The position numbers and the translations under genes are program-made. A stretch of DNA of 64,000 nucleotides from Octopus sinensis (Eukaryota). This document shows positions 5,498 through 64,000 of this stretch, piece after piece; the stretch's first letter is position 1, and each line of letters begins with the position of its first letter. A model generated the notes under the pieces. It was given only the letters and a program-made list of their open reading frames with translations, was not told the origin of the DNA and made no database searches. The stretch covers positions 53,816,001-53,880,000 of the forward strand of contig NC_043009.1 of assembly GCF_006345805.1 (NCBI RefSeq). The letters run 5' to 3'.

Positions 5498-6107
5498 CTC
5501 TATTAGCAAGAAATCTTGACATAAAACTGAATAATGACATACAGGCATACATACATGTATACATACATACATGCATATTTGCATGCATGGTGGGCAGCCT
5601 ATTTGGTCTTTAAATTCCAATGAATGAGTCTTGTTTCTAAGCTTGAAAGCCGAAATTCGTTGTATCCTTGAGCAAAACACTTCGTCTCTCGTTACTCCAG
5701 TCCACTCAGCTAGTAAAAGTGACTTGTAGCTGTAGTTCAAAGGACCAGCCTTGTCATTCTACATCTACAGCCGTGTCATTCTACATCTCTCCCTGAGAAA
5801 TAAGTTATGAGTACGCGTGATTCTGGAGTGATCAGTGACTTGCAGGTTAATTTCACGAGCAGATTGTTCCGTTAATCAGATAAACTGAAACACGCGTCGT
5901 CATAAGCGATGGAGAGTCGGACCAGGTCCGGTAATGTGTAATTTGAGGCGGAATTTAACTATCATTTCTAAGAGCTCAAGTATTATTGTTATTATAATCC
6001 TTTTCGCTACTGTTTTTGGTATTGTTCGGCATTGTATGTCTTTTGCTGTTATTTCATTGTAACCATTGTTAAACCGAAGTCTCTTCTCAATTATGTTACT
6101 GTTATGT

Positions 6108-9256: not shown

Positions 9257-9279
9257 CACGCACACACACACACACATAT

Positions 9280-9612
9280 AAAGACCCCCTTCGGTCATGA
9301 ATGGCCATGGGATTGCACCTAGAAAGTTACCCTCCTAGACACAAGTCCAGGCAAGGTTGTTTATGGAAGACCAGCAGTCGCCCATGCATACCAGCCTCCC
9401 CTCTCCACGCCACCAGTGTTATCCAAGGGAAAGACAAAGGTCGATACAGCTTGACATCTGTGACGTCGCAACTCATTTCTACAGCTGAGTGAACTGGAGC
9501 AACGTGAAATAAAGTCCCTTGCTCAAGATCACAACACGCAGCCCGGTCCGGGATTCGAGCTCACAACCTCACGATCGTAAGCTCCACGCTCTAACCACTG
9601 AGCCATGCGCCT
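9280..9612 (-). mobile_element. tRNA-Arg-like CORE-SINE family B
   Basis: Reverse complement of 12789-13121; tRNA head with TTACGAT loop; CORE-like TTGAGCAAGG(G)AC..CACGTTGCTCCAGT. Confidence 0.85.
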
Positions 9613-11934: not shown

Positions 11935-12675
11935 CAGTTAAGGATTCAAAAGGTTTCTATTTTAAAAAATCCGTTGGAAACAGCTGTAATTATGAGACGT
12001 TTAGCCGTTATTTGTTATATATTTGTTTATATGTATTTGTGTGCGTGTGTGTATGTACCTGTCTGTCTGTGTGTCTTGTCTCTGACTGTATGAATGCATA
12101 CATTTTTGTCGCAAAATTCGTGATCAGTATTTGTATGCCACTGATTTTTCTTTGCTTATAATCACTAAATATCCAAATGAAATGTTCCCTGAAGACGTAT
12201 ACCGCAGTATTACGCCGTTCTTATAAAACATCCAATTTAAGTAGGATGACTGGTCTATACTCAGAAACCCTGGTCCGTGTGTCGCGTCAGGATGGAGATG
12301 GGAATGATGACTTCGCTATGCAATTACTGATAGGACACAGACAGTGTATCAATATCCAGCTACAGGGGATGCCTTCCTGGGGCTACAAACTACAGTAGCA
12401 TCAACCCTTAAGGGTTAGCCACATGTAAGTGAAAATATACTTCACAATGTCCTGTAGCTACTGTTTATACCTCGCTCGGAGATATATTTTTGCTTGTTTT
12501 CACTTTTTCGATATCAGTGACTTTTCGTCACTGGAAAAAGGATATATATATATAAATACAATAAGAGGCTTCAAAATAGGAAAGCGTTGTGCTAGAAAGA
12601 GCAGTAGAAATCTCAAAGACCACAAAAAAGGATAAATTCTCGAAAGGAATGAAAATTAAAAACGTTTACCATCTC

Positions 12676-12767
<92 letters not shown>

Positions 12768-12788
12768 ATATATATATATATTTGTATC

Positions 12789-13121
12789 GGGTGGCTCAGT
12801 GGTTAGAGCGTCGAGCTTACGATCGTGAGGTTGTGAGCTCGAATCCCGGACCGGGCTGCGTGTTGTGTTCTCGAGCAAGGCACTTTATTTCACGTTGCTC
12901 CAGTTCACTCAGCTGTATAAATGAGTTGCGACGTCACAGGTGCCAAGCTGTATCGACCTTTGTCTTTCCCTTGGATAACACTGGTGGCGTGGAGAGGGGA
13001 GGCTGGTATGCATGGGCGACTGCTAGCCGTCCATAAACAACCTTGCCCGGACTTGTGTCTAGGAGGGTAACTTTCTAGGTGCAATCCCATGGTCATTCAT
13101 GACCGAAGGGGGTCTTTACCC
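12789..13121 (+). mobile_element. tRNA-Arg-like CORE-SINE family B
   Basis: GGCTCAGTGGTTAGAGCG..CTCGAATCCC head, CORE-like centre, tail GACCGAAGGGGGTCTTT. Confidence 0.85.
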
Positions 13122-14328
13122 TGTATTGGGAACAACACGTGGTTGTCACGCAGATGACGGATCAATACTCAGAGACCCAGGTCCGTGTGTATCACGTCAG
13201 GCTGGAGATGGGAAGGATGACTTCTCTTTGCAAATACTGATAGGGCACAGAAAGTATGTCAATAGCCAGCTGTAGATGTCTTCCTGGGGTTACAATCTAC
13301 AGTAGCATCTACCCTTAAGGGTTAGCCATATTTAAGTTGCAAATATAATTCATGAATATTTCTATTATACAAATACACACATGTATATATGTATGTATGC
13401 ATGACTCTACGTATTTATGTATGCATAAATGAATGAATGTATGTACCTGTGTATAGCATGTGGTGAATATGCATAGAGAAATATATATATATATAATATA
13501 TATATATATATATTATATATATATATATATATTGTGTGTCTGTTTGTATGTGTATGTGTTTGCATAAGCTTCCTAAACATCGTGAAATTATTGCTGCCTT
13601 CGTTCGAGGCTAGTTGAAGTAACCTGCAGAGGAGAACTTTAATGTCAGATGAAATATGCAACAGTTGTAAATTCGCGTTCATTACCTATATTGAAACATC
13701 GCTAAAAGTACATATACCCCTCAAATCTATAAATCTTTGTATGCATTTGATATGGATGCATGACATTATTTTCGATTGAATTTCGTATATTGTACTAACT
13801 TATATATCCGTTTATATGATCTCTGATATGTTAAACACATAGAGAAATCAACCTTGGATTTGTATAAGTAGGTGCACTTATATACAAGAGACAAGAACAC
13901 TTATACGCAAGTATATATATCAACATAGATTATATTATGTTAAAGCCATTCTGATCACCCATTAAGTAAACCCACGTACCTACACACAAGCAAACACACT
14001 ACACACACACATATATATATATGGCTGTATATATATATATATATGTCCGTATGTGTATGTTTTTATGCGTATGTATGTGTATGTGTGTGTGTTTGTGTAT
14101 TTTTATGTATAAGTATTTGGATATGTCCCTTCGATACGTGCATGTTATAATGAGAAATATTTGTTTGTGTAAAAGATACCAATCAACGCATAACATGCTA
14201 AAAGCGCATTTATGTATATAATGTACATAAGATATATTTACTTGTACACATGAATATTCACACGCGAATACACACTCATACACAGTGTTTCACACATACA
14301 AAACCCAAATTCAAATATATGTGTTGTG

Positions 14329-18625: not shown

Positions 18626-19951
18626 TTTTTTCTTCTTTCAAATTTTCTTCCATTTCTTGCCGAGTGTCTTCCCGACTCCTAGGGCAAAGAAACTCATAGT
18701 GTATATTGGTAGGCCATTAAACCAAACTCAGTTGTTCGTTCATTTTTTTTTTTTTTTTTTTTAAGTTAAATTAAAATGCATGAGCAGCAACAGTTCTCAC
18801 ATCGACAATGCTCTTCTCAATACGTGTGATGTACCAGTTAAGACAATCTTTTGCACTTCTTGCAGGGATGGTAACCAGGGATCATTCTCATATAATTTTC
18901 GGTTCCCTTCTTGATCATTCCTAGTGCTCCTACGATCACTGGTATTGTAACCGCCTTAAGATGCCACATTTTCTCAATTTCAATGAGTAGGTCTTTATAT
19001 TTTCTGAGCTTGTCAAACTCTTTCGCTCAGATATTATGATCACAGGGATGCTCATGTCGATCAATAAGCAAACTTTATTGTTTTGGTCTTTCACAACAAT
19101 ATCTGGTTTATTGGCCTTGATGGTTCGGTCTGTATGTACTGGAAAGTCCCACAGAATGGTTACATTTTCTCCTTCAGTTACAGCCTCAGGGTGGTGATTA
19201 TACCACTTGTCGGCAGTTTTGATATTGTAATGCCGACTTATTAGCCAGTGGAGATATTGGCCAACTCTGTCATGTCTTAATTTATACTCCACTGGTGCTA
19301 AGACTTTACATCCAGAGATTAGGTGGTCCACTGTTTCAATCATGTCGTTGCAGAATCGGCATTTTGGGTCTGCTCCATTTTTCATCACATTGGCCTGGTA
19401 GTTCCGGGTTGATAGGCTTTGGTCTTGAGCAGCCAGGATGAAACCTTCGCTCTCTGCTCTTAGCCCTGAGCTCCGCAGCCACTGATGGGTTTGCTTCTGG
19501 TCAACATCAGCTTGTTTGCTGCGGGTCACATATTTGCCGTGCAGAGGTTTCTCCTCCCACCTATCAGCCAATTGCTCGTGAGCTTTTTTCATTGCCATCA
19601 TTTTCACCTTCATTGCAACAATAGTTGCCGTACTTCCCTCGGGTTGTTCAGTTTGGGTATCCTGCACGAGATCAATAGCAAATTTTTTGCTTTCCTTGAT
19701 GATAGAATGAAGCTTCTTTCGTCGCTCGTGATTTTCCACGAGCTTTAGCATCCAGTCATTCGATATTTCGAGATATTTGGCCAGTCCAATTGTGGTTGTT
19801 TTGTAAGCTAGTTCAAATTGGATCAGGCCTCGACCTCCTTGGGCTCTGGGAAGGTAAAGGTGATCTACGTCTGCCTTTGGGTGGTGCATCCTATTACAAC
19901 TCAGCAGCTTCCGTATTTTTCTATCTATATTCTTTACTTCACTCATATTCC
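18626..19951 (-). mobile_element. 5'-truncated R4/Dong-clade non-LTR retrotransposon (RT C-terminus, CCHC knuckle, restriction-like endonuclease), frameshifted near 19040
   Basis: ORF 18936-19946 has ADVDHLYLPRAQGGRGL, CRFC..ETVDHLISGC and KPDIVV..IDMSIP. A shifted frame continues EFDKLRKYKDL..VIVGALG..VLRRALSM to a stop at 18797-18799. (TAA)n lies on both sides. Confidence 0.9.
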
Positions 19952-36390: not shown

Positions 36391-37114
36391 TGTTGTTGTT
36401 GTTGTTGTTGTAGTTGCTGCTGTTGTTGTTATTGTTTTCTTTGTTGTTAATGCTTCCGTTGTTATACAGAATTAGTGTTTTTCTTGGTTTAATTGTTTCC
36501 TATCGAACTGTAGCTTGAGGTTAAGATTAAAAGAACATTTTGATCATTTCGTAGAGAATTATTTTTTAGCTCTTTCCGAATATTTCTTGCTGAATATAAT
36601 AAATATAATATCTGCGCGGTATTAATTTTCAGACATCTCTTGGCTTTATTTTGACCGCATATGAAACCAACAACCTCGTGTTAATAGACGGTGACTTGAA
36701 CATCGCTCCACAGTCAAATATCTATCCTGCTGATATTGTTCTTTCTTCCTAAATAGTGTCGACTAAGTTTCTCACACAGTTTTTCTATTCTTGCTCCCTT
36801 TTATTTTTTTGTACGGTTTGCATTTTATTTTGATCTTAGTTATATTAACACCAATTTTTCTTTCATTCATCATTTAAGTATACATACTCGGCATGGTTTC
36901 GCATTTAGCAAAGTACCTAATTTTCTTATGAGCTTTAGAGATATGTGCAGATAAGATCTTGACTTCCATTGTAAAATTCTATAACGACTGACAACAGGCT
37001 GGAAGCATTCCCAGCTATGTTATCCGAGTAGCGGTGGCGTTGCTAATGAAGAACGCGAAAATAAAGGTGATATTATGGACAATTGCCAACCATATAGGTG
37101 CAGGAGTGGCTATA

Positions 37115-37525
37115 GGCGCAGGAGTGGATGTGCGGTAAGTAGCTTGCTAACCAACCACATGGTTCCGGGTTCAGTCCCACTGCGTGGCATCTTGGGCAAG
37201 TGTCTTCTGCTATAGCCCCGGGCCGACCAATGCCTTGTGAGTGGATCTGGTAGACGGAAACTGAAAGAAGCCTGTCGTATATATGTATATATATATATGT
37301 GTGTGTGTGTTTATGCCTGTGTTTGTCCCCCTGGCATTGCTTGACAACCGATGTTGGTGTGTTTACGTCCCCGTCACTTAGCGGTTCGGCAAAAGAGACC
37401 GATAGAATAAGTACTGGGCTTACAAAGAATAAGTCCTGGGGTCGATTTGCTCGACTAAAGGCGGTGCTCCAGCATGGCCGCAGTCAAATGACTGAAACAA
37501 GTAAAAGAGTAAAGAGTAAAAGAGT
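37115..37525 (+). mobile_element. tRNA-derived CORE-SINE family D with internal (TA)n(TG)n
   Basis: GGCGCAGGAGTGG head, CTTGGGCAAGTGTCTTC core, internal microsatellite, (GTAAAAGA)n tail; head duplicated at 37097. Confidence 0.85.
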
Positions 37526-41290: not shown

Positions 41291-41370
41291 TCAGAGAAGG
41301 CTTGGGGTAGTACTCTTTTATTCATGTCAATAGTTTTGTGCCTTCTATCTGCACACACACACACATATAT

Positions 41371-41760
41371 TGTTTCAGTCATTTGACTGCAGCCATGCTG
41401 GAGCACCGCCTTTAGTCGAGCAAATCGTCCCCAGGACTTATTCTTTATAAGCCCAGTACTTATTCTATCGGTCTCTTTTGCCGAACCGCTAAGTGACGGG
41501 GACGTAAACACACCAGCATCGGTTGTCAAGCAATGCTAGGGGGACAAACACAGACACATAAACACACACACACACATATATATATATACATATATACGAC
41601 AGGCTTCTTTCAGTTTCCGTCTACCAAATCCACTCACAAGGCTTTAGTCGGCCCGAGGCTATAGCAGAAGACACTTGCCCAAGATGCCATGCAGTGGGAC
41701 TGAACCCGGAACCATGTGGTTGGTTAGCAAGCTACTTACCACTCAGCCACTCCTGTGCCT
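41371..41760 (-). mobile_element. SINE family D
   Basis: Reverse complement of the 37115-37525 family. Confidence 0.85.
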
Positions 41761-43677
41761 ATATATATATATATATATATACTTGTGTGAGTATATATAC
41801 ACACATAATACCTATATATATATGTGTGTGTGTGTGTGTATTATATTATATTTTATGTGCGTATGTGTGTGTGCGTGTTTGTGTAAATGAATATCTGTAT
41901 ACGGTGATGACCGCTGTCTACTCATGACCGAGGAAGACCATACTGACCATTCCCTATGCAAAATGCCACCCGCGGGGTTGCACTACCAGTCGGGTTGCAC
42001 CAGCAGTTGGATTTGCCCCAGGAGTCGGGTTCACCCGGTTTCGCGTCCGCAACTTCCAAGCTTATTGCGGGGCCCTCCTTCTTGACCGGGTCAGCAATTG
42101 CACAACCTAAAATTTTAGATCTAATAATGCTTCCAGAGCACCTCACAGATCCTCTGCAACCTACTGACATGATCTAGAGACGCGTCAGGGAAACTATCCA
42201 GTGGTGAGGTGTGTCGCAATCTCAGGAATATGGAAACACCATGTTCTATAGCAAAAGCAAAATATTCCTGAAATGTGCTATGCTATTCCCTGTACATCTG
42301 ATTTTTAATCAGAGTGACCTTCTCCTAGAAAAAGAATTCATGAAAAAGCTAAGCAATGCCTCATTCCCAGTAATCTTCCAGCATACCAGACACCAATCTG
42401 GAATTTTTGAGAGCCCAAACCCGGTATACACTAGTATAACCATATTTTGCAGAGAAGGCCTAAAAAGACGGAAATATGTAAACTTTTGTTAATCTTACTT
42501 CCCAAAACCTAAATTAGCTATTCATTGTATATCTCGAACAGCTGTTTACAAAATTTGCTAAAGTAAATCAGGATTTCGAATTTACCACAACAGAATTTTT
42601 TTAACAAGAGTTATAAACGCAAATGACGTTTATTGTAAATGTAATGCGAATAACTATTTCTTATTGACCTACTATATTAAATATATTAAAGTCAGTTTAT
42701 GTAACTTAAAAGGGATTAATTGATTTAACAGTACATCCCTGTTTTGGTAGATTAGACTAAATTCTAAAATGTCAAGAAATACAGATGCTCTGGTATCTAA
42801 TTTACTGATAATAAACCCCACAAAGATACTATAAATAACTTATTGTGTATGGCACACGTCTAGACATTAACACCGTATTTTAATACGTGCTGTACAAGCA
42901 CTTGGTGCAACGCCTCACCTGTTCATATAACAATAACAATAAGCAGCAGTGATAGTGGTGTAGAAATGTCCAGGTGTCAATATAAGATCACCATTCCAAA
43001 GTAATAAAAAATATATAAATAAATGAACATTAAAATTAATGTAATCACATACATGTTTGAAATACTTATAAAATACTGAAAAAAAAAATATTAAAAGTAT
43101 TATATTGTATATGTATATGTATGAATACACAACACACACACACACGCACACATACACACATATACTCGTATATATAATATATATATATACGTTATTTTTG
43201 TTATAAAAGATACATAAAATTACATACACAAACCACACACATATATATATTACATATATATATTTATATATATATTATATATATATATATATACAAACCT
43301 TTACAAGCACACACACTTAAGCACAGGAGTATATACATGTTTATATATTATATTAAATATGTATATAAATATACATATATATATACATGTATATATATAC
43401 AATTTATATTATATATATATTCATATATATATTATTATAATATATATATAATATTGTGCACACACATACACTCAAGACAAGTCAGATATGACGTCAATTC
43501 ACAGACTAAAATTTACTTTATATACATTAATTTCTTTACAGGTATATTTTTCTTATAGACTATAACTTGTTTGAAAATTTTCTTTTGTATTTATAATTTT
43601 GATATTATCTCATAACATTACGTAATTGATGTGGAAAGAAGCTTCTCTTATAGTATTTAACATGATATTTCGTTGAT

Positions 43678-46200: not shown

Positions 46201-46500
46201 AAGAGAGAAAGAGAGGGAGAGGGAGAGGGAGAGAGAGACATGCACATACATATATACTCTTTTACACATTTCACATTTGATTTTACACATTTGATTGCGG
46301 CCATTCTGAAAAACCGCATTTAGTGGAAGAAATCGACCTAGGACATATTCTTTGTAAGCCTAGTACGTCTTCTATCAGTCTCTGTTGCCAAACTATTGCT
46401 TCGGGGCTATAAACACACCAACATCAATTGTCAAGTAAAGGGGTGGGCAAACACAGACTCAAAGGCACACATACATATATATATGTGTATATATACATAT

Positions 46501-46682
46501 ACTCTTTTACTTGTTTCAGTCATTTGAGTGCGGCCATGCTGGAGCACCGCCTTTAGTCGAGCAAATCGACCCCGGGACTTATTCTTTGTAAGCTCAGTAC
46601 TTATTCTATCGGTCTCTTTTGCCGAACCGCTAAGTGACCGGACGTAAACACACACCAGCATCGGTTGACAAACACATACACA

Positions 46683-46738
<56 letters not shown>

Positions 46739-46913
46739 ATATACATATATACGACAGGCTTCTTTCAGTTTCCGTCTACCAAATCCACTCACAAGGCATT
46801 GGTCGGCCCGGGCTATAGCAGAAGACTTTTGCCAAGATGCAACGCAGTGGGATTGAACCCAGAACCATGTGGTTGGTTAGCAAGCTACTTACCACACAGC
46901 CACTCCTGCGCCT
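46501..46913 (-). mobile_element. SINE family D
   Basis: Reverse complement of the 37115-37525 family; a partial extra 3' piece lies at 46325-46445. Confidence 0.85.
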
Positions 46914-46930
46914 GTAATATATATATATAT

Positions 46931-58234: not shown

Positions 58235-58450
58235 GAAGGGCCGGTATTCCAGTATCATGGCATGTATATTCCTCATCTAGATGGGACACCGGTTCGTCGC
58301 AGGATTACTCAATCTTTTCAAGCTGGGTGCAATGGAGCAACGTGAAATGAAGTGTTTTCCTCAAGAACACTACGCGTCGCCCTTTTCAGGAATCGATACC
58401 ACAACCTTACGATTAATGAGTCCAACACCCTAACCACTAAATCACGCACC
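58235..58450 (-). mobile_element. SINE family E
   Basis: Collinear with 2085-2295. Confidence 0.65.
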
Positions 58451-61400: not shown

Positions 61401-62035
61401 GTTTGCAAATGTGTAGTTATATCAAGCGGCACCGAAGCTTCATGCGAAAGTGTCAAACCAGGTAGTCGAGAAAAGATTACCTCATGTGCTCGGTAAATAT
61501 TTGTTGCATAATTATGTGCGTTGTGAGAAGAGGTAAAACCCAACTCCAGAGTAATTTCGTGGATTGTGAAATGAACTTCAGTAGAGACGTACACGGTTTC
61601 CTATTTCAATCTTAAACACATATTCACGAATTAACGACGAGTTGTTAAGGTCTCAATTAGGTTATTCTCTAAGATGCTAAACTAATTTGTCATTACTATA
61701 TATGCTAGATACAAAAAAGACAACCGGAAAAGTTGTCTTTGAGAAATATCCATCCAAACATGAAGTTCTCCGTCACCAATTCCACATCCCCCCATAACAC
61801 ACTATCGTTTTTATATTTATTTCAATTCTGCTGATTTTCGCTATATTTTATTGGAAATCATATTTATGTGTGTGTGTATTTATGTGCGAGTGTGTGTGTG
61901 TGTGCATGTATATATATATATATATATATAGATATATATATAGTACACATAATTACACATATACACACACATATATACATATACATACACACACATATAT
62001 ATATATATACATACATGTATATACACACCACACAC

Positions 62036-62067
<32 letters not shown>

Positions 62068-62223
62068 CTTAACGTAAGGTTTACTAGCCATCTGAATGTG
62101 GCTAGCCACTGGGGGGGTGGGGTGTTACTGATATGCTTTTAGCCCCAGGCGATCAACGTCACCAGATGGACTTTAGACACTATCTCAGTGCCCTTGTGTT
62201 ATTTGCAAAGGGGGGTAATCCCC

Positions 62224-62302
62224 TCGAAGACCTAAGTACTACATACGGACTATAGTTTCAAGGTAAGCCTCTCGTCAACGTATGGTAAGCACCGGTCTTC
62301 GA
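62224..62302 (-). ncRNA. Type I hammerhead ribozyme (U3 core variant)
   Basis: Minus strand reads CATACG-TTGACGA-GAGG-CTTA-CCTT-GAA-ACTATAGT-C-CGTATG: 6-bp stem I, core, stem II, palindromic helix III and GUC triplet. Stem I extends via GGTGC/GTACT and TCGAAGACC/GGTCTTCGA. Confidence 0.8.
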
Positions 62303-62470
62303 TGAAGGGTCCCCTCGCAAATAATATATAACGTTTTTCACAGCAACCACTGTCACTGATTTAGAAAAACTGTCTGAAAGCAATAATAAATCTCTGAACG
62401 AGATATAAACAGTAACCGATCGACAACGTAAGGTGAAAAACGTTATATATTTTGCGAGGGGACTCCTTCA

Positions 62471-62551
62471 TCGAAGACCGGTGATTACCATGCGTTGACG
62501 AGAGGCAATTACCTTGAAACTATAGTCCGTATGTAGTACTTAGGTCTTGGA
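62471..62551 (+). ncRNA. Type I hammerhead ribozyme (U3 core variant)
   Basis: CATGCG(62489)-TTGACGA-GAGG-CAATTA-CCTT-GAA-ACTATAGT-C(62527)-CGTATG; predicted cleavage after 62527; extended stem I present. Confidence 0.78.
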
Positions 62552-62756
62552 GGGAGGATAGATGACCTCCCTTTGCAAATAACCACAAGGGCACTGAGAT
62601 AGTGTCTAAAGTCCATCTGGTGACGTTGAGGGCCTGGGGCTAAAAGCATCAGTACACCCCACCCCCAGTGGCTAGCCACATTCAGATGGTTGTACACCTT
62701 ACGTGTCGAGCGTTACTGTTTATTATCTCGTTAGAGTTTATTATGCTTAATATATA

Positions 62757-63142
62757 TACTCTTTTACTCTGTTACTGTTTCATTCATTTCACTGCGACCA
62801 TGCTGGAGCACGCTTTAGTCGAGCAATCGACCCCAGGACTGATTCTTTGTGAGCGTAGTACTTATTCTGTCGGTCTATTTTGCGAACCGCAGTGGACGGG
62901 GGACATAAACACACCAGCATCGGTGCCAAGCACTGCTTGGGGGACAAACACTGACACAAACATACACACACATACACATATATACATATATACGACGGGC
63001 TTCTTCAGTTTCGTCTACCAATCCACTACAAGGCTTTGGTGGCCCCAGTATAGAAGAAAATCGCCAAGAGCCACGCAATGGGACTGAAACCGGGACACTG
63101 TGGTGGTAAGCAAGCTAGGTACACACAGCCACTCCTGCGCCT
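62757..63142 (-). mobile_element. SINE family D with many 1-nt deletions
   Basis: Same family; scattered single-base deletions relative to the other copies. Confidence 0.8.
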
Positions 63143-63436
63143 ACAATAAGCATTCGCTAAGAGTTTGATTCGAACGAACGAAAGCGTTAATAAAGAAGAT
63201 TATTCACAATAATGAGGCTTCTTTTTCTTAATATACAATATCTTTACACCTTTCAAACACGTTGTGTGTCTGTTTGTGCGTTGTATATATATAAATACAC
63301 ACACACATAGAGAGACCCATAATACATATATATATATATATATTATATATTATATATTACACATAATATACACATATACCACACATATATACATATACAT
63401 ACACACACATATATATATATATACATACATGTATAT

Positions 63437-63469
<33 letters not shown>

Positions 63470-63623
63470 CTTAACGTAAGGTTTACTAGCCATCTGAATG
63501 TGGCTAGCCACTGGGGGTGGGGTGTTACTGATGCTTTTAGCCCCAGGCGATCAACGTCACCAGATGGGACTTTAGACACTATCTCAGTGCCCTTGTGTTA
63601 TTTGCAAAGGGGGGTAATCCTCC

Positions 63624-63705
63624 TCGAAGACCTAAGTACTACATACGGACTATAGTTTCAAGGTAATTGGCCTCTCGTCAACGTATGGTAAGCACCGGTC
63701 TTCGA
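63624..63705 (-). ncRNA. Type I hammerhead ribozyme
   Basis: Minus strand reads CATACG-TTGACGA-GAGG-CCAATTA-CCTT-GAA-ACTATAGT-C-CGTATG (63687-63642) with extended stem I. Confidence 0.78.
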
Positions 63706-63873
63706 TGAAAGAGTCCCCTCGCAATAATATATAACGTTTTTCACAGCAACCACTGTCACTGATTTAGAAAAACTGTCTGAAAGCAATAATAAATCTCTGA
63801 ACGAGATATAACAGTAACCGATCGACAACGTAAGGTGAAAAACGTTATATATTATTGCGAGGGGACTCCTTCA

Positions 63874-63953
63874 TCGAAACCGGTGCTTACCATGCGTTGA
63901 CGAGAGGCAATTACCTTGAAACTATAGTCCGTATGTAGTACTTAGGTCTTGGA
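63874..63953 (+). ncRNA. Type I hammerhead ribozyme
   Basis: CATGCG(63891)-TTGACGA-GAGG-CAATTA-CCTT-GAA-ACTATAGT-C(63929)-CGTATG. Confidence 0.75.
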
Positions 63954-64000
63954 GGGAGGATGACCTCCCTTTGCAAATAACACAAGGGCACTGAGATAGT

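What the first reader, a model, noticed from the sequence alone, without database searches (positions are those of the whole stretch)
62072..62750. Near-intact type I hammerhead ribozymes in a ~354-nt circularly permuted monomer: candidate octopus retrozyme
Seen: each arm folds as CATRCG / TTGACGA / GAGG-loop-CCTT / GAA / ACTATAGT / C / CGTATG. Stem I extends through an internal loop to a further 5-bp and a 9-bp helix. The left arm is exactly one 354-nt period. The right arm reads across the monomer junction (62696-62750 equals the inverse of 62378-62435), so the template was tandem or circular. Established: metazoan non-LTR retrozymes are tandem monomers of a few hundred nt with type I HHRs. 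Penelope-associated HHRs often have a palindromic helix III and cleave as dimers. Inference: this is a non-autonomous, HHR-processed, circRNA-forming retroelement mobilised by a Penelope-like RT. I do not know of a description in octopus. The core has U3 instead of C3 and a G-U pair at the base of stem II.
Basis: partly seen in the sequence, partly recalled or inferred. Interest (0 to 1): 0.95.

Follow-up and report, generated by a model that had tools for sequence, protein, structure and literature searches.

The report
Fossil hammerhead retrozyme-like insertion, inverted pair
A 680-bp insertion made of two head-to-head copies of a 354-nt repeat, each carrying a slightly defective hammerhead ribozyme motif, looks like a dead copy of a known kind of ribozyme-bearing mobile element ("retrozyme") and not a new kind of system.

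Summary
Both arms of the inverted repeat at 62071-62748 carry the same type I hammerhead layout (62489-62533 +, 62242-62284 -). My descriptor finds only these sites and their duplicates, against 0.01 expected by chance. The 354-nt period and the circular permutation between the arms are confirmed. An 11-bp target-site duplication (ATATATATACT) at a microsatellite/SINE boundary marks it as an insertion.

Several points weaken the interpretation:
- The core has an uncompensated U3 opposite G8 and a G·U pair at 10.1-11.1.
- Rfam Hammerhead_1 aligns 45/45 positions but scores 17.1 bits (threshold 34). The left arm gives no hit.
- Each strand has one ribozyme per locus, so this locus cannot release a 354-nt circle. 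A full transcript would fold into a ~270-bp hairpin.
- The copy at 63472 onward is a 1.4-kb segmental duplicate, not an independent insertion.
- The window contains no Penelope RT/GIY-YIG.
- No external copies could be reached, and "octopus" is unverified.

Best reading: a fossil insertion of a non-autonomous, retrozyme-type element, reverse-transcribed from a multimeric or circular RNA with head-to-head (twin-priming or Penelope-style) integration. It is a new member of a known kind, of moderate interest.

The parts
62059..62069 (.). Left copy of the target-site duplication ATATATATACT. Its last three bases, ACT, are the first bases of the adjacent SINE terminus.
   Evidence: The same 11-mer occurs at 62750-62760. 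A paralogous SINE copy at 46467 onward shows microsatellite|ACTCTTTTACT, which matches the reconstructed empty site.
62071..62435 (-). Left arm: one full 354-nt monomer plus an 11-nt terminal redundancy (CCTTACGTT..). It is ribozyme-sense on the minus strand, with its 5' end at the centre of the palindrome.
   Evidence: CCTTACGT at 62433 and 62079; nhmmer, 62433-62070, E 2.8e-112.
62242..62284 (-). Hammerhead motif L1: CATACG TTGACGA GAGG CTTA CCTT GAA ACTATAGT C CGTATG. The predicted cleavage site is 3' of C17, at 62248.
   Evidence: No Rfam hit even when only 76 nt were searched.
62433..62435 (.). Inversion junction. The GTG/CAC microhomology is shared by the 5' ends of both arms.
   Evidence: Read from the sequence and the alignments. 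The microhomology itself is an inference.
62433..62748 (+). Right arm: 316 nt covering monomer positions about 93->354->56. It is a different circular permutation of the same unit, with its 5' end at the centre.
   Evidence: 90.4% identity to the left arm over 280 columns; the tail matches the start of the left monomer; nhmmer, model positions 92-405 of the dimer.
62489..62533 (+). Hammerhead motif R1: CATGCG TTGACGA GAGG CAATTA CCTT GAA ACTATAGT C CGTATG. The predicted cleavage site is 3' of C62527.
   Evidence: Rfam RF00163 aligns 45/45 positions without indels at 17.1 bits against a gathering score of 34.
62750..62760 (.). Right copy of the target-site duplication ATATATATACT, followed by the SINE terminus CTTTTACTC...
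63472..64000 (.). Second copy of the whole inverted element, cut off by the window end, with hammerhead motifs at 63642-63687 (-) and 63891-63935 (+). It belongs to a ~1416-bp tandem duplication (61910-63325 / 63326-end) that includes the upstream microsatellite.
   Evidence: One search shows only 2 substitutions and 19 gap columns over 539 columns against copy 1.
12237..12549 (+). relA: an old diverged relative (63% identity) covering monomer positions ~150->354->~110. This is a third permutation that also reads through the CCTTACGT junction. The ribozyme core is decayed (AGGATGA) and the 5' strand of helix I is absent.
   Evidence: nhmmer, E 6e-20.
13145..13345 (+). relB: a second old relative (59% identity to the young family, 83% to relA) covering monomer positions ~150->352. 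The ribozyme core is decayed (CAGATGA, GAG).
   Evidence: nhmmer, E 3.6e-9. No Rfam hammerhead hit.

Best explanation
The feature at 62071-62748 is a fossil insertion of a small, non-coding, hammerhead-bearing retroelement of the metazoan 'non-LTR retrozyme' kind.

What is shown. A 354-nt unit carries one type I hammerhead-like motif. Two copies of the unit lie head to head (5' ends together), with different circular permutations. They are flanked by an 11-bp target-site duplication at the edge of a TA/CA microsatellite.

Inferred life cycle of the family, by analogy with published retrozymes. Tandem units are transcribed. The hammerheads cut the transcript, probably as dimers through the perfectly palindromic helix III (ACUAUAGU). 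The 354-nt RNA is circularised by a host tRNA ligase. A reverse transcriptase supplied in trans copies the circle or multimer at a nicked target.

Inferred origin of this locus. Both target strands primed cDNA synthesis on a template more than two units long (twin priming, or the Penelope-style 'inverted 5'-truncated copy'). The two cDNAs met at a GTG microhomology. The template already carried U3 and U11.1, because both arms share them.

Present state of the locus. It is most likely inert. Each strand has one ribozyme, so no unit-length RNA can be excised. A read-through transcript would fold into a ~270-bp hairpin that buries both ribozymes. The core has an uncompensated U3·G8. A later ~1.4-kb tandem duplication produced the second copy.
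For: Motif: four sites only, against 0.01 expected by chance. It is co-linear with Rfam Hammerhead_1 over 45/45 positions, with loop 2 CAAUUA against the consensus CAAAUA. The architecture (helix I 6 bp, helix II 4 bp, helix III 2 bp plus a palindromic tetraloop) equals the published 'canonical metazoan' type I HHR (PMC4209133).

Structure support: 84.6% of cells are paired, against 14-43% with slid partners. Three pairs change on both sides, one in each helix.

Unit properties: 354 nt, GC 44.6%, no open frame longer than 58 codons, MFE z-score -4.3, 64% paired as a circle. These fit the published range of 170-400 nt, <50% GC and highly self-paired (PMC7229834).

Circular or tandem template: three different permutations, in L, R and relA.

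Insertion: 11-bp TSD supported by a paralogous empty-site-like SINE terminus. The published statement is that TSDs in metazoan retrozymes exceed 4 bp.

Head-to-head inverted copy, partial tandem and microsatellite target: these are published hallmarks of Penelope-type integration (PMC8557442).

Family depth: two ~60%-identical relatives lie 50 kb away.
Against: - No hammerhead family reaches Rfam's gathering score. The best score is 17.1 bits against 34, and only the right arm scores at all.
- U3 opposite G8 is not the known compensated variant U3-A8 (PMC3088659), so catalysis may be poor or absent.
- The locus is not a tandem array, which is the defining genomic form of retrozymes.
- No copies outside the window could be retrieved. 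Copy number, arrays and family-wide covariation are therefore untested.
- The ribozyme is not better conserved than the rest of the unit in the old relatives: 0.57-0.70 against a mean of 0.59-0.63, with the best block at monomer positions 14-45.
- No RT or GIY-YIG is present in the window.
- The covariation evidence rests on about three lineages.
Confidence: 0.7

Rival explanations
1. It is a fragment of a hammerhead-bearing satellite DNA (a tandem array) that was moved or rearranged at the DNA level by a palindrome-forming break or repair event. No RNA intermediate or reverse transcription was involved at this locus.
For: Permuted units only show that the source was tandem or circular, and a DNA array satisfies that. 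Head-to-head palindromes can arise by DNA repair. The region is prone to DNA-level duplication, as the 1.4-kb tandem duplicate shows.
Against: The 11-bp TSD with clean boundaries at a microsatellite/SINE junction points to insertion and not to local array decay. Each arm holds only about one unit, and no array remnant flanks it. The classical hammerhead 'satellites' have themselves been reinterpreted as retrozymes (PMC7229834).
Confidence: 0.12
2. It is a solo pseudo-LTR or internally deleted remnant of an autonomous Penelope-like element, and not a dedicated non-autonomous retrozyme family.
For: The insertion anatomy (inverted 5'-truncated copy, partial tandem, microsatellite target) is described for PLEs themselves. 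A 2026 preprint finds that retrozymes and pLTRs are sister sequences (10.64898/2026.07.22.740005).
Against: There is no RT/GIY-YIG remnant in or near the element. The hammerhead is of the canonical class and not the PLE min-HHR class, which has a long helix II, a short helix I and an extra base between positions 9 and 10.1. The unit closes on itself at 354 nt with no room for an ORF. The 30-40-bp 'tail' is not seen.
Confidence: 0.1
3. It is a foldback or MITE-type DNA transposon, or a hairpin-RNA/miRNA locus, and the hammerhead-like motif is coincidental.
For: There is a long inverted repeat of ~270-bp arms. TTAA lies at both ends. Rfam long-hairpin models (MIR821) score E 1e-7 to 6e-13.
Against: The ends are not inverted copies of each other. 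The right arm extends about 50 nt further, and that extension matches the central loop, not the left terminus. The MIR821 scores are 51-74 bits against a threshold of 249, for a plant family. The motif has a chance expectation of 0.01 and aligns over the full length of RF00163. The old relatives are single-arm and permuted.
Confidence: 0.04

Closest known systems
Metazoan non-LTR retrozymes (Cervera & de la Pena 2020, PMC7229834), e.g. mussel retrozymes and axolotl Rtz_353
   Same: Both have a unit size within 170-400 nt (354 nt here), GC below 50%, no coding capacity and no LTR/PBS/PPT. Both carry one type I hammerhead per unit with a weak palindromic helix III, give a strongly self-paired RNA, have a TSD longer than 4 bp, and show evidence of a circular or tandem template.
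   Different: Here there is no tandem array on either strand: 1.03 and 0.9 units lie head to head. The ribozyme core has U3·G8 and G10.1·U11.1. Expression and circularity are untested. The host, possibly a cephalopod, is not among the described hosts in the papers I could search.
Canonical metazoan type I hammerhead, Rfam RF00163 (Schistosoma, newt satellite, cave cricket)
   Same: The alignment is gap-free over 45/45 model positions. Helix lengths are the same, N7 is C, and loop 2 is CAAUUA against CAAAUA. GAAAC...GUC is present, and an unpaired UAC lies 5' of helix I (the UAC comparison is from memory).
   Different: The score is half the gathering threshold. C3 is replaced by U and C11.1 by U. 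The helix II and helix III sequences differ from the seed consensus.
Penelope-like element insertion architecture (Craig et al. 2021, PMC8557442)
   Same: An inverted 5'-truncated copy abuts the 5' end, the unit is read through as a partial tandem, and the insertion is in a microsatellite.
   Different: There is no RT/GIY-YIG ORF and no 30-40-bp tail. The ribozyme is not of the PLE 'min-HHR' type.
L1 'twin priming' inversions (Ostertag & Kazazian 2001; from my own knowledge, not checked here)
   Same: Two cDNA segments of one RNA are joined 5'-to-5' at a microhomology, flanked by a TSD.
   Different: The template here must have been more than two units long or circular. The reverse transcriptase involved is unknown.
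Natural hammerhead core variants (Perreault et al. 2011, PMC3088659)
   Same: Both involve a deviation at position 3 and a non-canonical 10.1-11.1 pair. U10.1-U11.1 variants are reported active.
   Different: The documented active variant at position 3 is the compensated U3-A8. Here G8 is kept, giving a U·G wobble of unknown competence.

Membership tests
Hammerhead ribozyme, type I (Rfam RF00163) | Conserved core C3 U4 G5 A6 N7 G8 A9 / G12 A13 A14 / A15.1-U16.1 / H17 | tested here: not met
   Every conserved position is present except C3, which is U in all four copies. G8 is unchanged, so the C3-G8 pair becomes U·G. This is not the known U3-A8 covariant.
Hammerhead ribozyme, type I (Rfam RF00163) | Three helices in type I topology: helix I open, helices II and III capped | tested here: met
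   Helix I is 6 bp, helix II is 4 bp (with G·U at 10.1-11.1), and helix III is 2 bp plus a UAUA loop. 84.6% of cells are paired across six copies, against 14-43% with slid partners.
Hammerhead ribozyme, type I (Rfam RF00163) | Score at or above Rfam's gathering threshold | tested here: not met
   No hits at gathering threshold. The right arm scores 17.1 bits against 34. The left arm gives no hit.
Hammerhead ribozyme, type I (Rfam RF00163) | Covariation supporting the helices | tested here: inconclusive
   Three pairs change on both sides, one per helix, but from only about three lineages. Two of those lineages have decayed cores.
Hammerhead ribozyme, type I (Rfam RF00163) | Mg-dependent self-cleavage 3' of position 17 | not testable with these tools
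   This needs in vitro transcription of monomer and dimer constructs.
Metazoan non-LTR retrozyme | Tandem repeats (dimer or longer) of a 150-450-bp unit, each with a type I HHR | tested here: not met
   The unit size is met at 354 nt. However, the locus holds 1.03 and 0.9 units in opposite orientation, with one HHR per strand. Only the inferred template was tandem or circular. 'Solo monomer' derivatives are recognised in the 2026 preprint.
Metazoan non-LTR retrozyme | Low GC (<50%), non-coding, no LTR/PBS/PPT, highly self-paired RNA | tested here: met
   GC is 44.6%, the longest open frame is 58 codons, the MFE z-score is -4.3, and 64% is paired in the circular fold.
Metazoan non-LTR retrozyme | Insertion with a TSD larger than 4 bp | tested here: met
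   ATATATATACT occurs at 62059-62069 and 62750-62760. A paralogous SINE terminus supports the empty-site model.
Metazoan non-LTR retrozyme | Many genomic copies; expressed as linear and circular RNA | not testable with these tools
   No eukaryotic genome or transcriptome is searchable here. Within the window there is one young locus (duplicated) plus two old relatives. External scans were all empty.
Penelope-like element (autonomous) | ORF with PLE reverse transcriptase and GIY-YIG endonuclease | tested here: not met
   The only RT-related ORF is the zf-RVT tail of a LINE, at 18936-19946 (-). Ten other non-repetitive ORFs gave no RT/GIY-YIG hit.
Penelope-like element (insertion signature) | Partial tandem, an adjacent inverted 5'-truncated copy, and a microsatellite target | tested here: met
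   compared with the description in PMC8557442. The 30-40-bp tail was not found.
Foldback/MITE DNA transposon | Terminal inverted repeats reaching both ends symmetrically | tested here: not met
   The right terminus (62697-62748) pairs with the central loop sequence and not with the left terminus.
MIR821 miRNA precursor (Rfam RF00885) | Score at or above the gathering threshold | tested here: not met
   Scores are 51-74 bits against 249. This is a generic long-hairpin match.

The most novel reading that the evidence does not exclude
The U3·G8 / G10.1·U11.1 hammerhead is not a dead copy. It is the working core of a retrozyme family in this (possibly cephalopod) genome. It cleaves as a dimer through its perfect 8-bp palindromic helix III and gives 354-nt circular RNAs. 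Under this reading, the head-to-head, differently permuted arms are a direct genomic footprint of two-strand priming on a circular template. Both arms share U3 and U11.1, so the RNA that was actually mobilised carried this variant core. Either it was cleavage-competent, or mobilisation does not require cleavage.
Probability: 0.2. Interest if true: 0.55.

Novelty: new member of a known kind. Interest (0 to 1): 0.35.

Why it matters
If the family is confirmed genome-wide, it would extend ribozyme-bearing circular-RNA retroelements to another animal lineage. It would also give a clean example of how such elements integrate: different permutations in the two arms, a TSD, and a microsatellite target. 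That step is still only modelled in the retrozyme literature. The shared U3·G8 core poses a simple bench question: is a wobble at the C3-G8 pair tolerated in a natural, dimer-forming hammerhead? As it stands, the locus is one inert copy of a known kind of element, so its value is mainly for annotation and as a lead.

Tried and rejected
(1) Rfam. The whole window at gathering threshold gave nothing. A 2.2-kb search at E<=10 gave only long-hairpin and microsatellite 'miRNA' matches, which I rejected as artefacts of the inverted repeat and the TA/CA repeats.

(2) Reaching other genomic copies through spurious ORFs. The 62-aa ORF inside the arm gave no candidates. The 139-aa ORF spanning the element end and the SINE also gave none. 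No frame of the monomer is open, so tandem arrays would not appear as long proteins.

(3) DNA pattern scans. The ribozyme (stem II left free) and the most conserved non-ribozyme block gave 0 matches in metagenome contigs, viral contigs and prokaryotic genomes.

(4) Organism identity. The LINE-tail ORF's best hit (98%) comes from an Italian sewage metagenome. Named hits at <=67% identity are shrimp and cnidarians, and none is an octopus. The look-up of the window's own ORF found nothing.

(5) Penelope RT nearby. None was found.

(6) The idea that relB is the 3' part of a tRNA-derived SINE. Rejected: that SINE ends at 13118 and has a 96% paralogue at 9279-9605 without the relB part.

(7) The idea that relA and relB are a split tandem dimer. 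The intervening sequence shows no significant match to the missing monomer segment, with scores within the shuffle range. This is unresolved.

(8) piggyBac-like TTAA element. Rejected because the termini are not inverted repeats of each other.

(9) Preferential conservation of the ribozyme in the old relatives. Not seen.

Full report
**Observation**

The sequence at 62071-62748 is a large imperfect palindrome. A self-BLAST aligns 62072-62704 to its own reverse complement at 83.8% over 659 columns. A gapped alignment of the arms (62341-62072 minus strand against 62433-62704 plus strand) gives 90.4% identity.

I wrote a type I hammerhead descriptor: helix I 6 bp, CUGANGA, helix II 4 bp, loop 3-8 nt, GAA, A15.1...U16.1, H17, then the return strand of helix I. 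With a perfect core it finds nothing in the 64-kb window. With one core mismatch it finds exactly four sites:
- 62489-62533 (+)
- 62242-62284 (-)
- 63891-63935 (+)
- 63642-63687 (-)

All four read CATRCG TTGACGA GAGG-loop-CCTT GAA ACTATAGT C CGTATG. 200 first-order Markov random windows gave a mean of 0.01 hits.

**Rfam**

No family reaches its gathering score anywhere in the window. At E<=10 on 61800-64000 no hammerhead family appears. The top hits (MIR821 and others, 51-74 bits against a threshold of 249) are generic responses to a long hairpin and to TA/CA microsatellites.

When only 86 nt are searched, Hammerhead_1 (RF00163) aligns end to end, 45 of 45 model positions with no indel. Loop 2 is CAAUUA against the consensus CAAAUA. 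The score is 17.1 bits against a threshold of 34. The left arm, whose loop 2 is 4 nt, gives no hit.

The layout equals the 'canonical metazoan' type I hammerhead described by Cervera & de la Pena: helix I 6 bp, helix II 4 bp, and helix III 1-2 bp capped by a small palindromic loop, thought to act as a dimer (PMC4209133). It is not their Penelope 'min-HHR' class. Helix III, ACTATAGT, is a perfect 8-nt palindrome.

**Core deviations**

C3 pairs with G8 in the active fold (PMC3884650). The natural covariant is U3-A8 (PMC3088659). Here G8 is kept, so the pair becomes a U·G wobble, which is uncompensated. Perreault et al. note that core mutants usually retain only low activity, although a non-canonical 10.1-11.1 pair (U-U) can be tolerated. 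From memory only, C3U single mutants lose orders of magnitude in rate. Activity is therefore doubtful and untested.

**Unit and permutation**

On the minus strand CCTTACGT recurs at 62433 and 62079, exactly 354 nt apart. The left arm is one unit plus an 11-nt redundancy. The right arm starts at unit position ~93, runs through position 354, and continues for about 52 nt into sequence matching the start of the left unit (62695-62748 against 62435-62378).

nhmmer with a dimer of the unit also finds two old relatives. relA is at 12237-12549 (E 6e-20, positions ~150->354->~110, again across the junction). relB is at 13145-13345 (E 3.6e-9). With three different permutations, the source was tandem or circular.

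The unit is 44.6% GC (the window is 34%). It has no open frame longer than 58 codons. It folds at -114.9 kcal/mol (z = -4.3; 0 of 100 shuffles fold as well). As a circle it is 64% paired. In the MFE fold the hammerhead sits at the tip of a long helix I extension: an unpaired UAC, then a 6-bp helix and a 9-bp helix.

**Insertion signature**

The element is flanked by ATATATATACT on both sides (62059-62069 and 62750-62760). To its right lies a ~390-bp SINE-like repeat (62757-63143) with copies at 37113-37518, 41368-41761 and 46488-46919. The copy at 46467 onward shows its terminus ACTCTTTTACT directly preceded by TA/CA microsatellite. This is exactly the reconstructed empty site here.

The left flank of the element carries 'ACT', the first bases of the SINE terminus. 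This makes the 11-bp duplication credible despite the simple-sequence context.

The two arms are joined 5'-to-5' at a GTG microhomology (62433-62435), and each arm ends at its 3' side against the target. Craig et al. describe the same picture for Penelope-type integration: a partial tandem, an inverted 5'-truncated copy adjacent to the 5' end, and a bias for microsatellites (PMC8557442). From my own knowledge it also resembles L1 twin priming. Placing both arms on one template requires an RNA of about 2.2 units or a circle. This step is inference.

**The second copy**

63472-end matches 62072-62603 at 96% and shares about 160 bp of complex upstream microsatellite (61910-62080 against 63326-63482). 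It is a tandem segmental duplicate of about 1416 bp and not an independent insertion.

Differences between the copies are 2 substitutions and 19 gap columns. Between the arms they are 9 substitutions and 18 gap columns. Many of the indels lie in homopolymer or dinucleotide runs and may be assembly noise. In substitution terms the arms are about 97% identical. The loop 2 length differences (4, 6 and 7 nt) should be read with this caution.

**Comparative support**

All six ribozyme-like segments parse gap-free into the same layout. For the hammerhead structure, 84.6% of cells pair, against 14-43% with slid partners. Three pairs change on both sides: helix I U-A to C-G (relB), helix II A-U to G-C (relB), and helix III U-A to C-G (relA and relB).

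This is supportive but thin. There are only about three lineages. The relatives have decayed cores (AGGATGA, CAGATGA, GAG) and poor helix II. The ribozyme is no better conserved than the rest of the unit (0.57-0.70 against a mean of 0.59-0.63), and the best block is at unit positions 14-45.

**What could not be shown**

- No Penelope RT or GIY-YIG is in the window. The only RT-related ORF is a 5'-truncated LINE tail (zf-RVT) at 18936-19946 (-).
- No external copies could be reached by ORF-based protein searches or by DNA pattern scans of metagenomic, viral and prokaryotic collections.
- The 'octopus' label is unverified. The LINE tail's 98% match is from a sewage metagenome, and the named hits are shrimp and cnidarians. 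My impression that the SINEs look cephalopod-like is memory only.
- The searchable literature has no hammerhead or retrozyme report for cephalopods.
- Retrozymes are documented in a mussel, corals, amphibians and many other animals (PMC7229834). A 2026 preprint links them to Penelope pLTRs and recognises solo monomers (10.64898/2026.07.22.740005).

**Verdict**

The best explanation (confidence about 0.7) is a fossil insertion of a retrozyme-type, hammerhead-bearing non-autonomous retroelement. It was copied from a multimeric or circular RNA and integrated head to head at a microsatellite, then segmentally duplicated.

At this locus it cannot produce a unit-length circle, because each strand has only one ribozyme. 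A read-through transcript would form a ~270-bp hairpin. Because both arms share U3 and U11.1, the mobilised RNA already had the variant core. That leaves open the more interesting possibility that this core works.

It is a new member of a known kind, with interest 0.35.

Noticed in passing
window 61910-63325 and 63326-64000: There is a tandem duplication of about 1416 bp made of microsatellite, the inverted element and a SINE. The two units differ by 2 substitutions but 19 gap columns, many in homopolymer or dinucleotide runs. That pattern suggests a very recent duplication, long-read assembly noise, or both.
   Followed up: partly
window 62757-63143 (-); copies at 37113-37518, 41368-41761, 46488-46919, 46250-46496: An interspersed SINE-like repeat of about 390 bp (77-84% identity between copies). 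Its terminus, ACTCTTTTACT..., tends to abut TA/CA microsatellite. It provided the empty-site comparison for the insertion.
   Followed up: partly
window 12792-13118 (+) and 9279-9605 (-): A second SINE family with a tRNA-like head (GGTGGCTCAGTGGTTAGAGC...). The two copies are 96% identical, and weaker fragments lie at 58321-58438, 2169-2289 and 5659-5726. ARAGORN calls no tRNA anywhere in the window.
   Followed up: partly
window 12237-13345: The two old relatives, relA and relB, lie in the same orientation 908 bp apart, and both begin at the ribozyme. They are separated by a long (TA)n tract and the young SINE. They may be remnants of an old tandem dimer, but the intervening sequence shows no significant match to the missing unit segment.
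   Followed up: partly
window 18936-19946 (-): A 336-aa ORF that is the C-terminal zinc-finger (zf-RVT) tail of a LINE-type reverse transcriptase, 5'-truncated at an AT-rich run. A 98%-identical protein is encoded on a 1983-bp contig of an Italian sewage metagenome (ERZ22666216). The next-best hits are <=67% identical.
   Followed up: partly
window 62071-62748 and 63472-64000: A transcript through the whole locus would form a hairpin of ~270 bp. This is why Rfam long-hairpin models (MIR821, MIR4416, MIR1120) score here. Such dsRNA could be a substrate for RNA editing or small-RNA pathways, which was not tested.
   Followed up: no
unit positions 14-56, i.e. window 62378-62420 (-) and 62710-62748 (+); relA 12459-12500: The best-conserved block between the young family and the old relatives is not the ribozyme. 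It is a segment containing a small hairpin (AUCUCGUUCAGAGAU). The 3' end of the right arm falls at its edge. Its function is unknown.
   Followed up: no
whole window: The window is 34% GC and dense in TA/CA/TATG-type microsatellites. These generate most of the long 'ORFs' (CMYV..., IYIY..., HTHT... repeats). No convincing host gene was seen.
   Followed up: no
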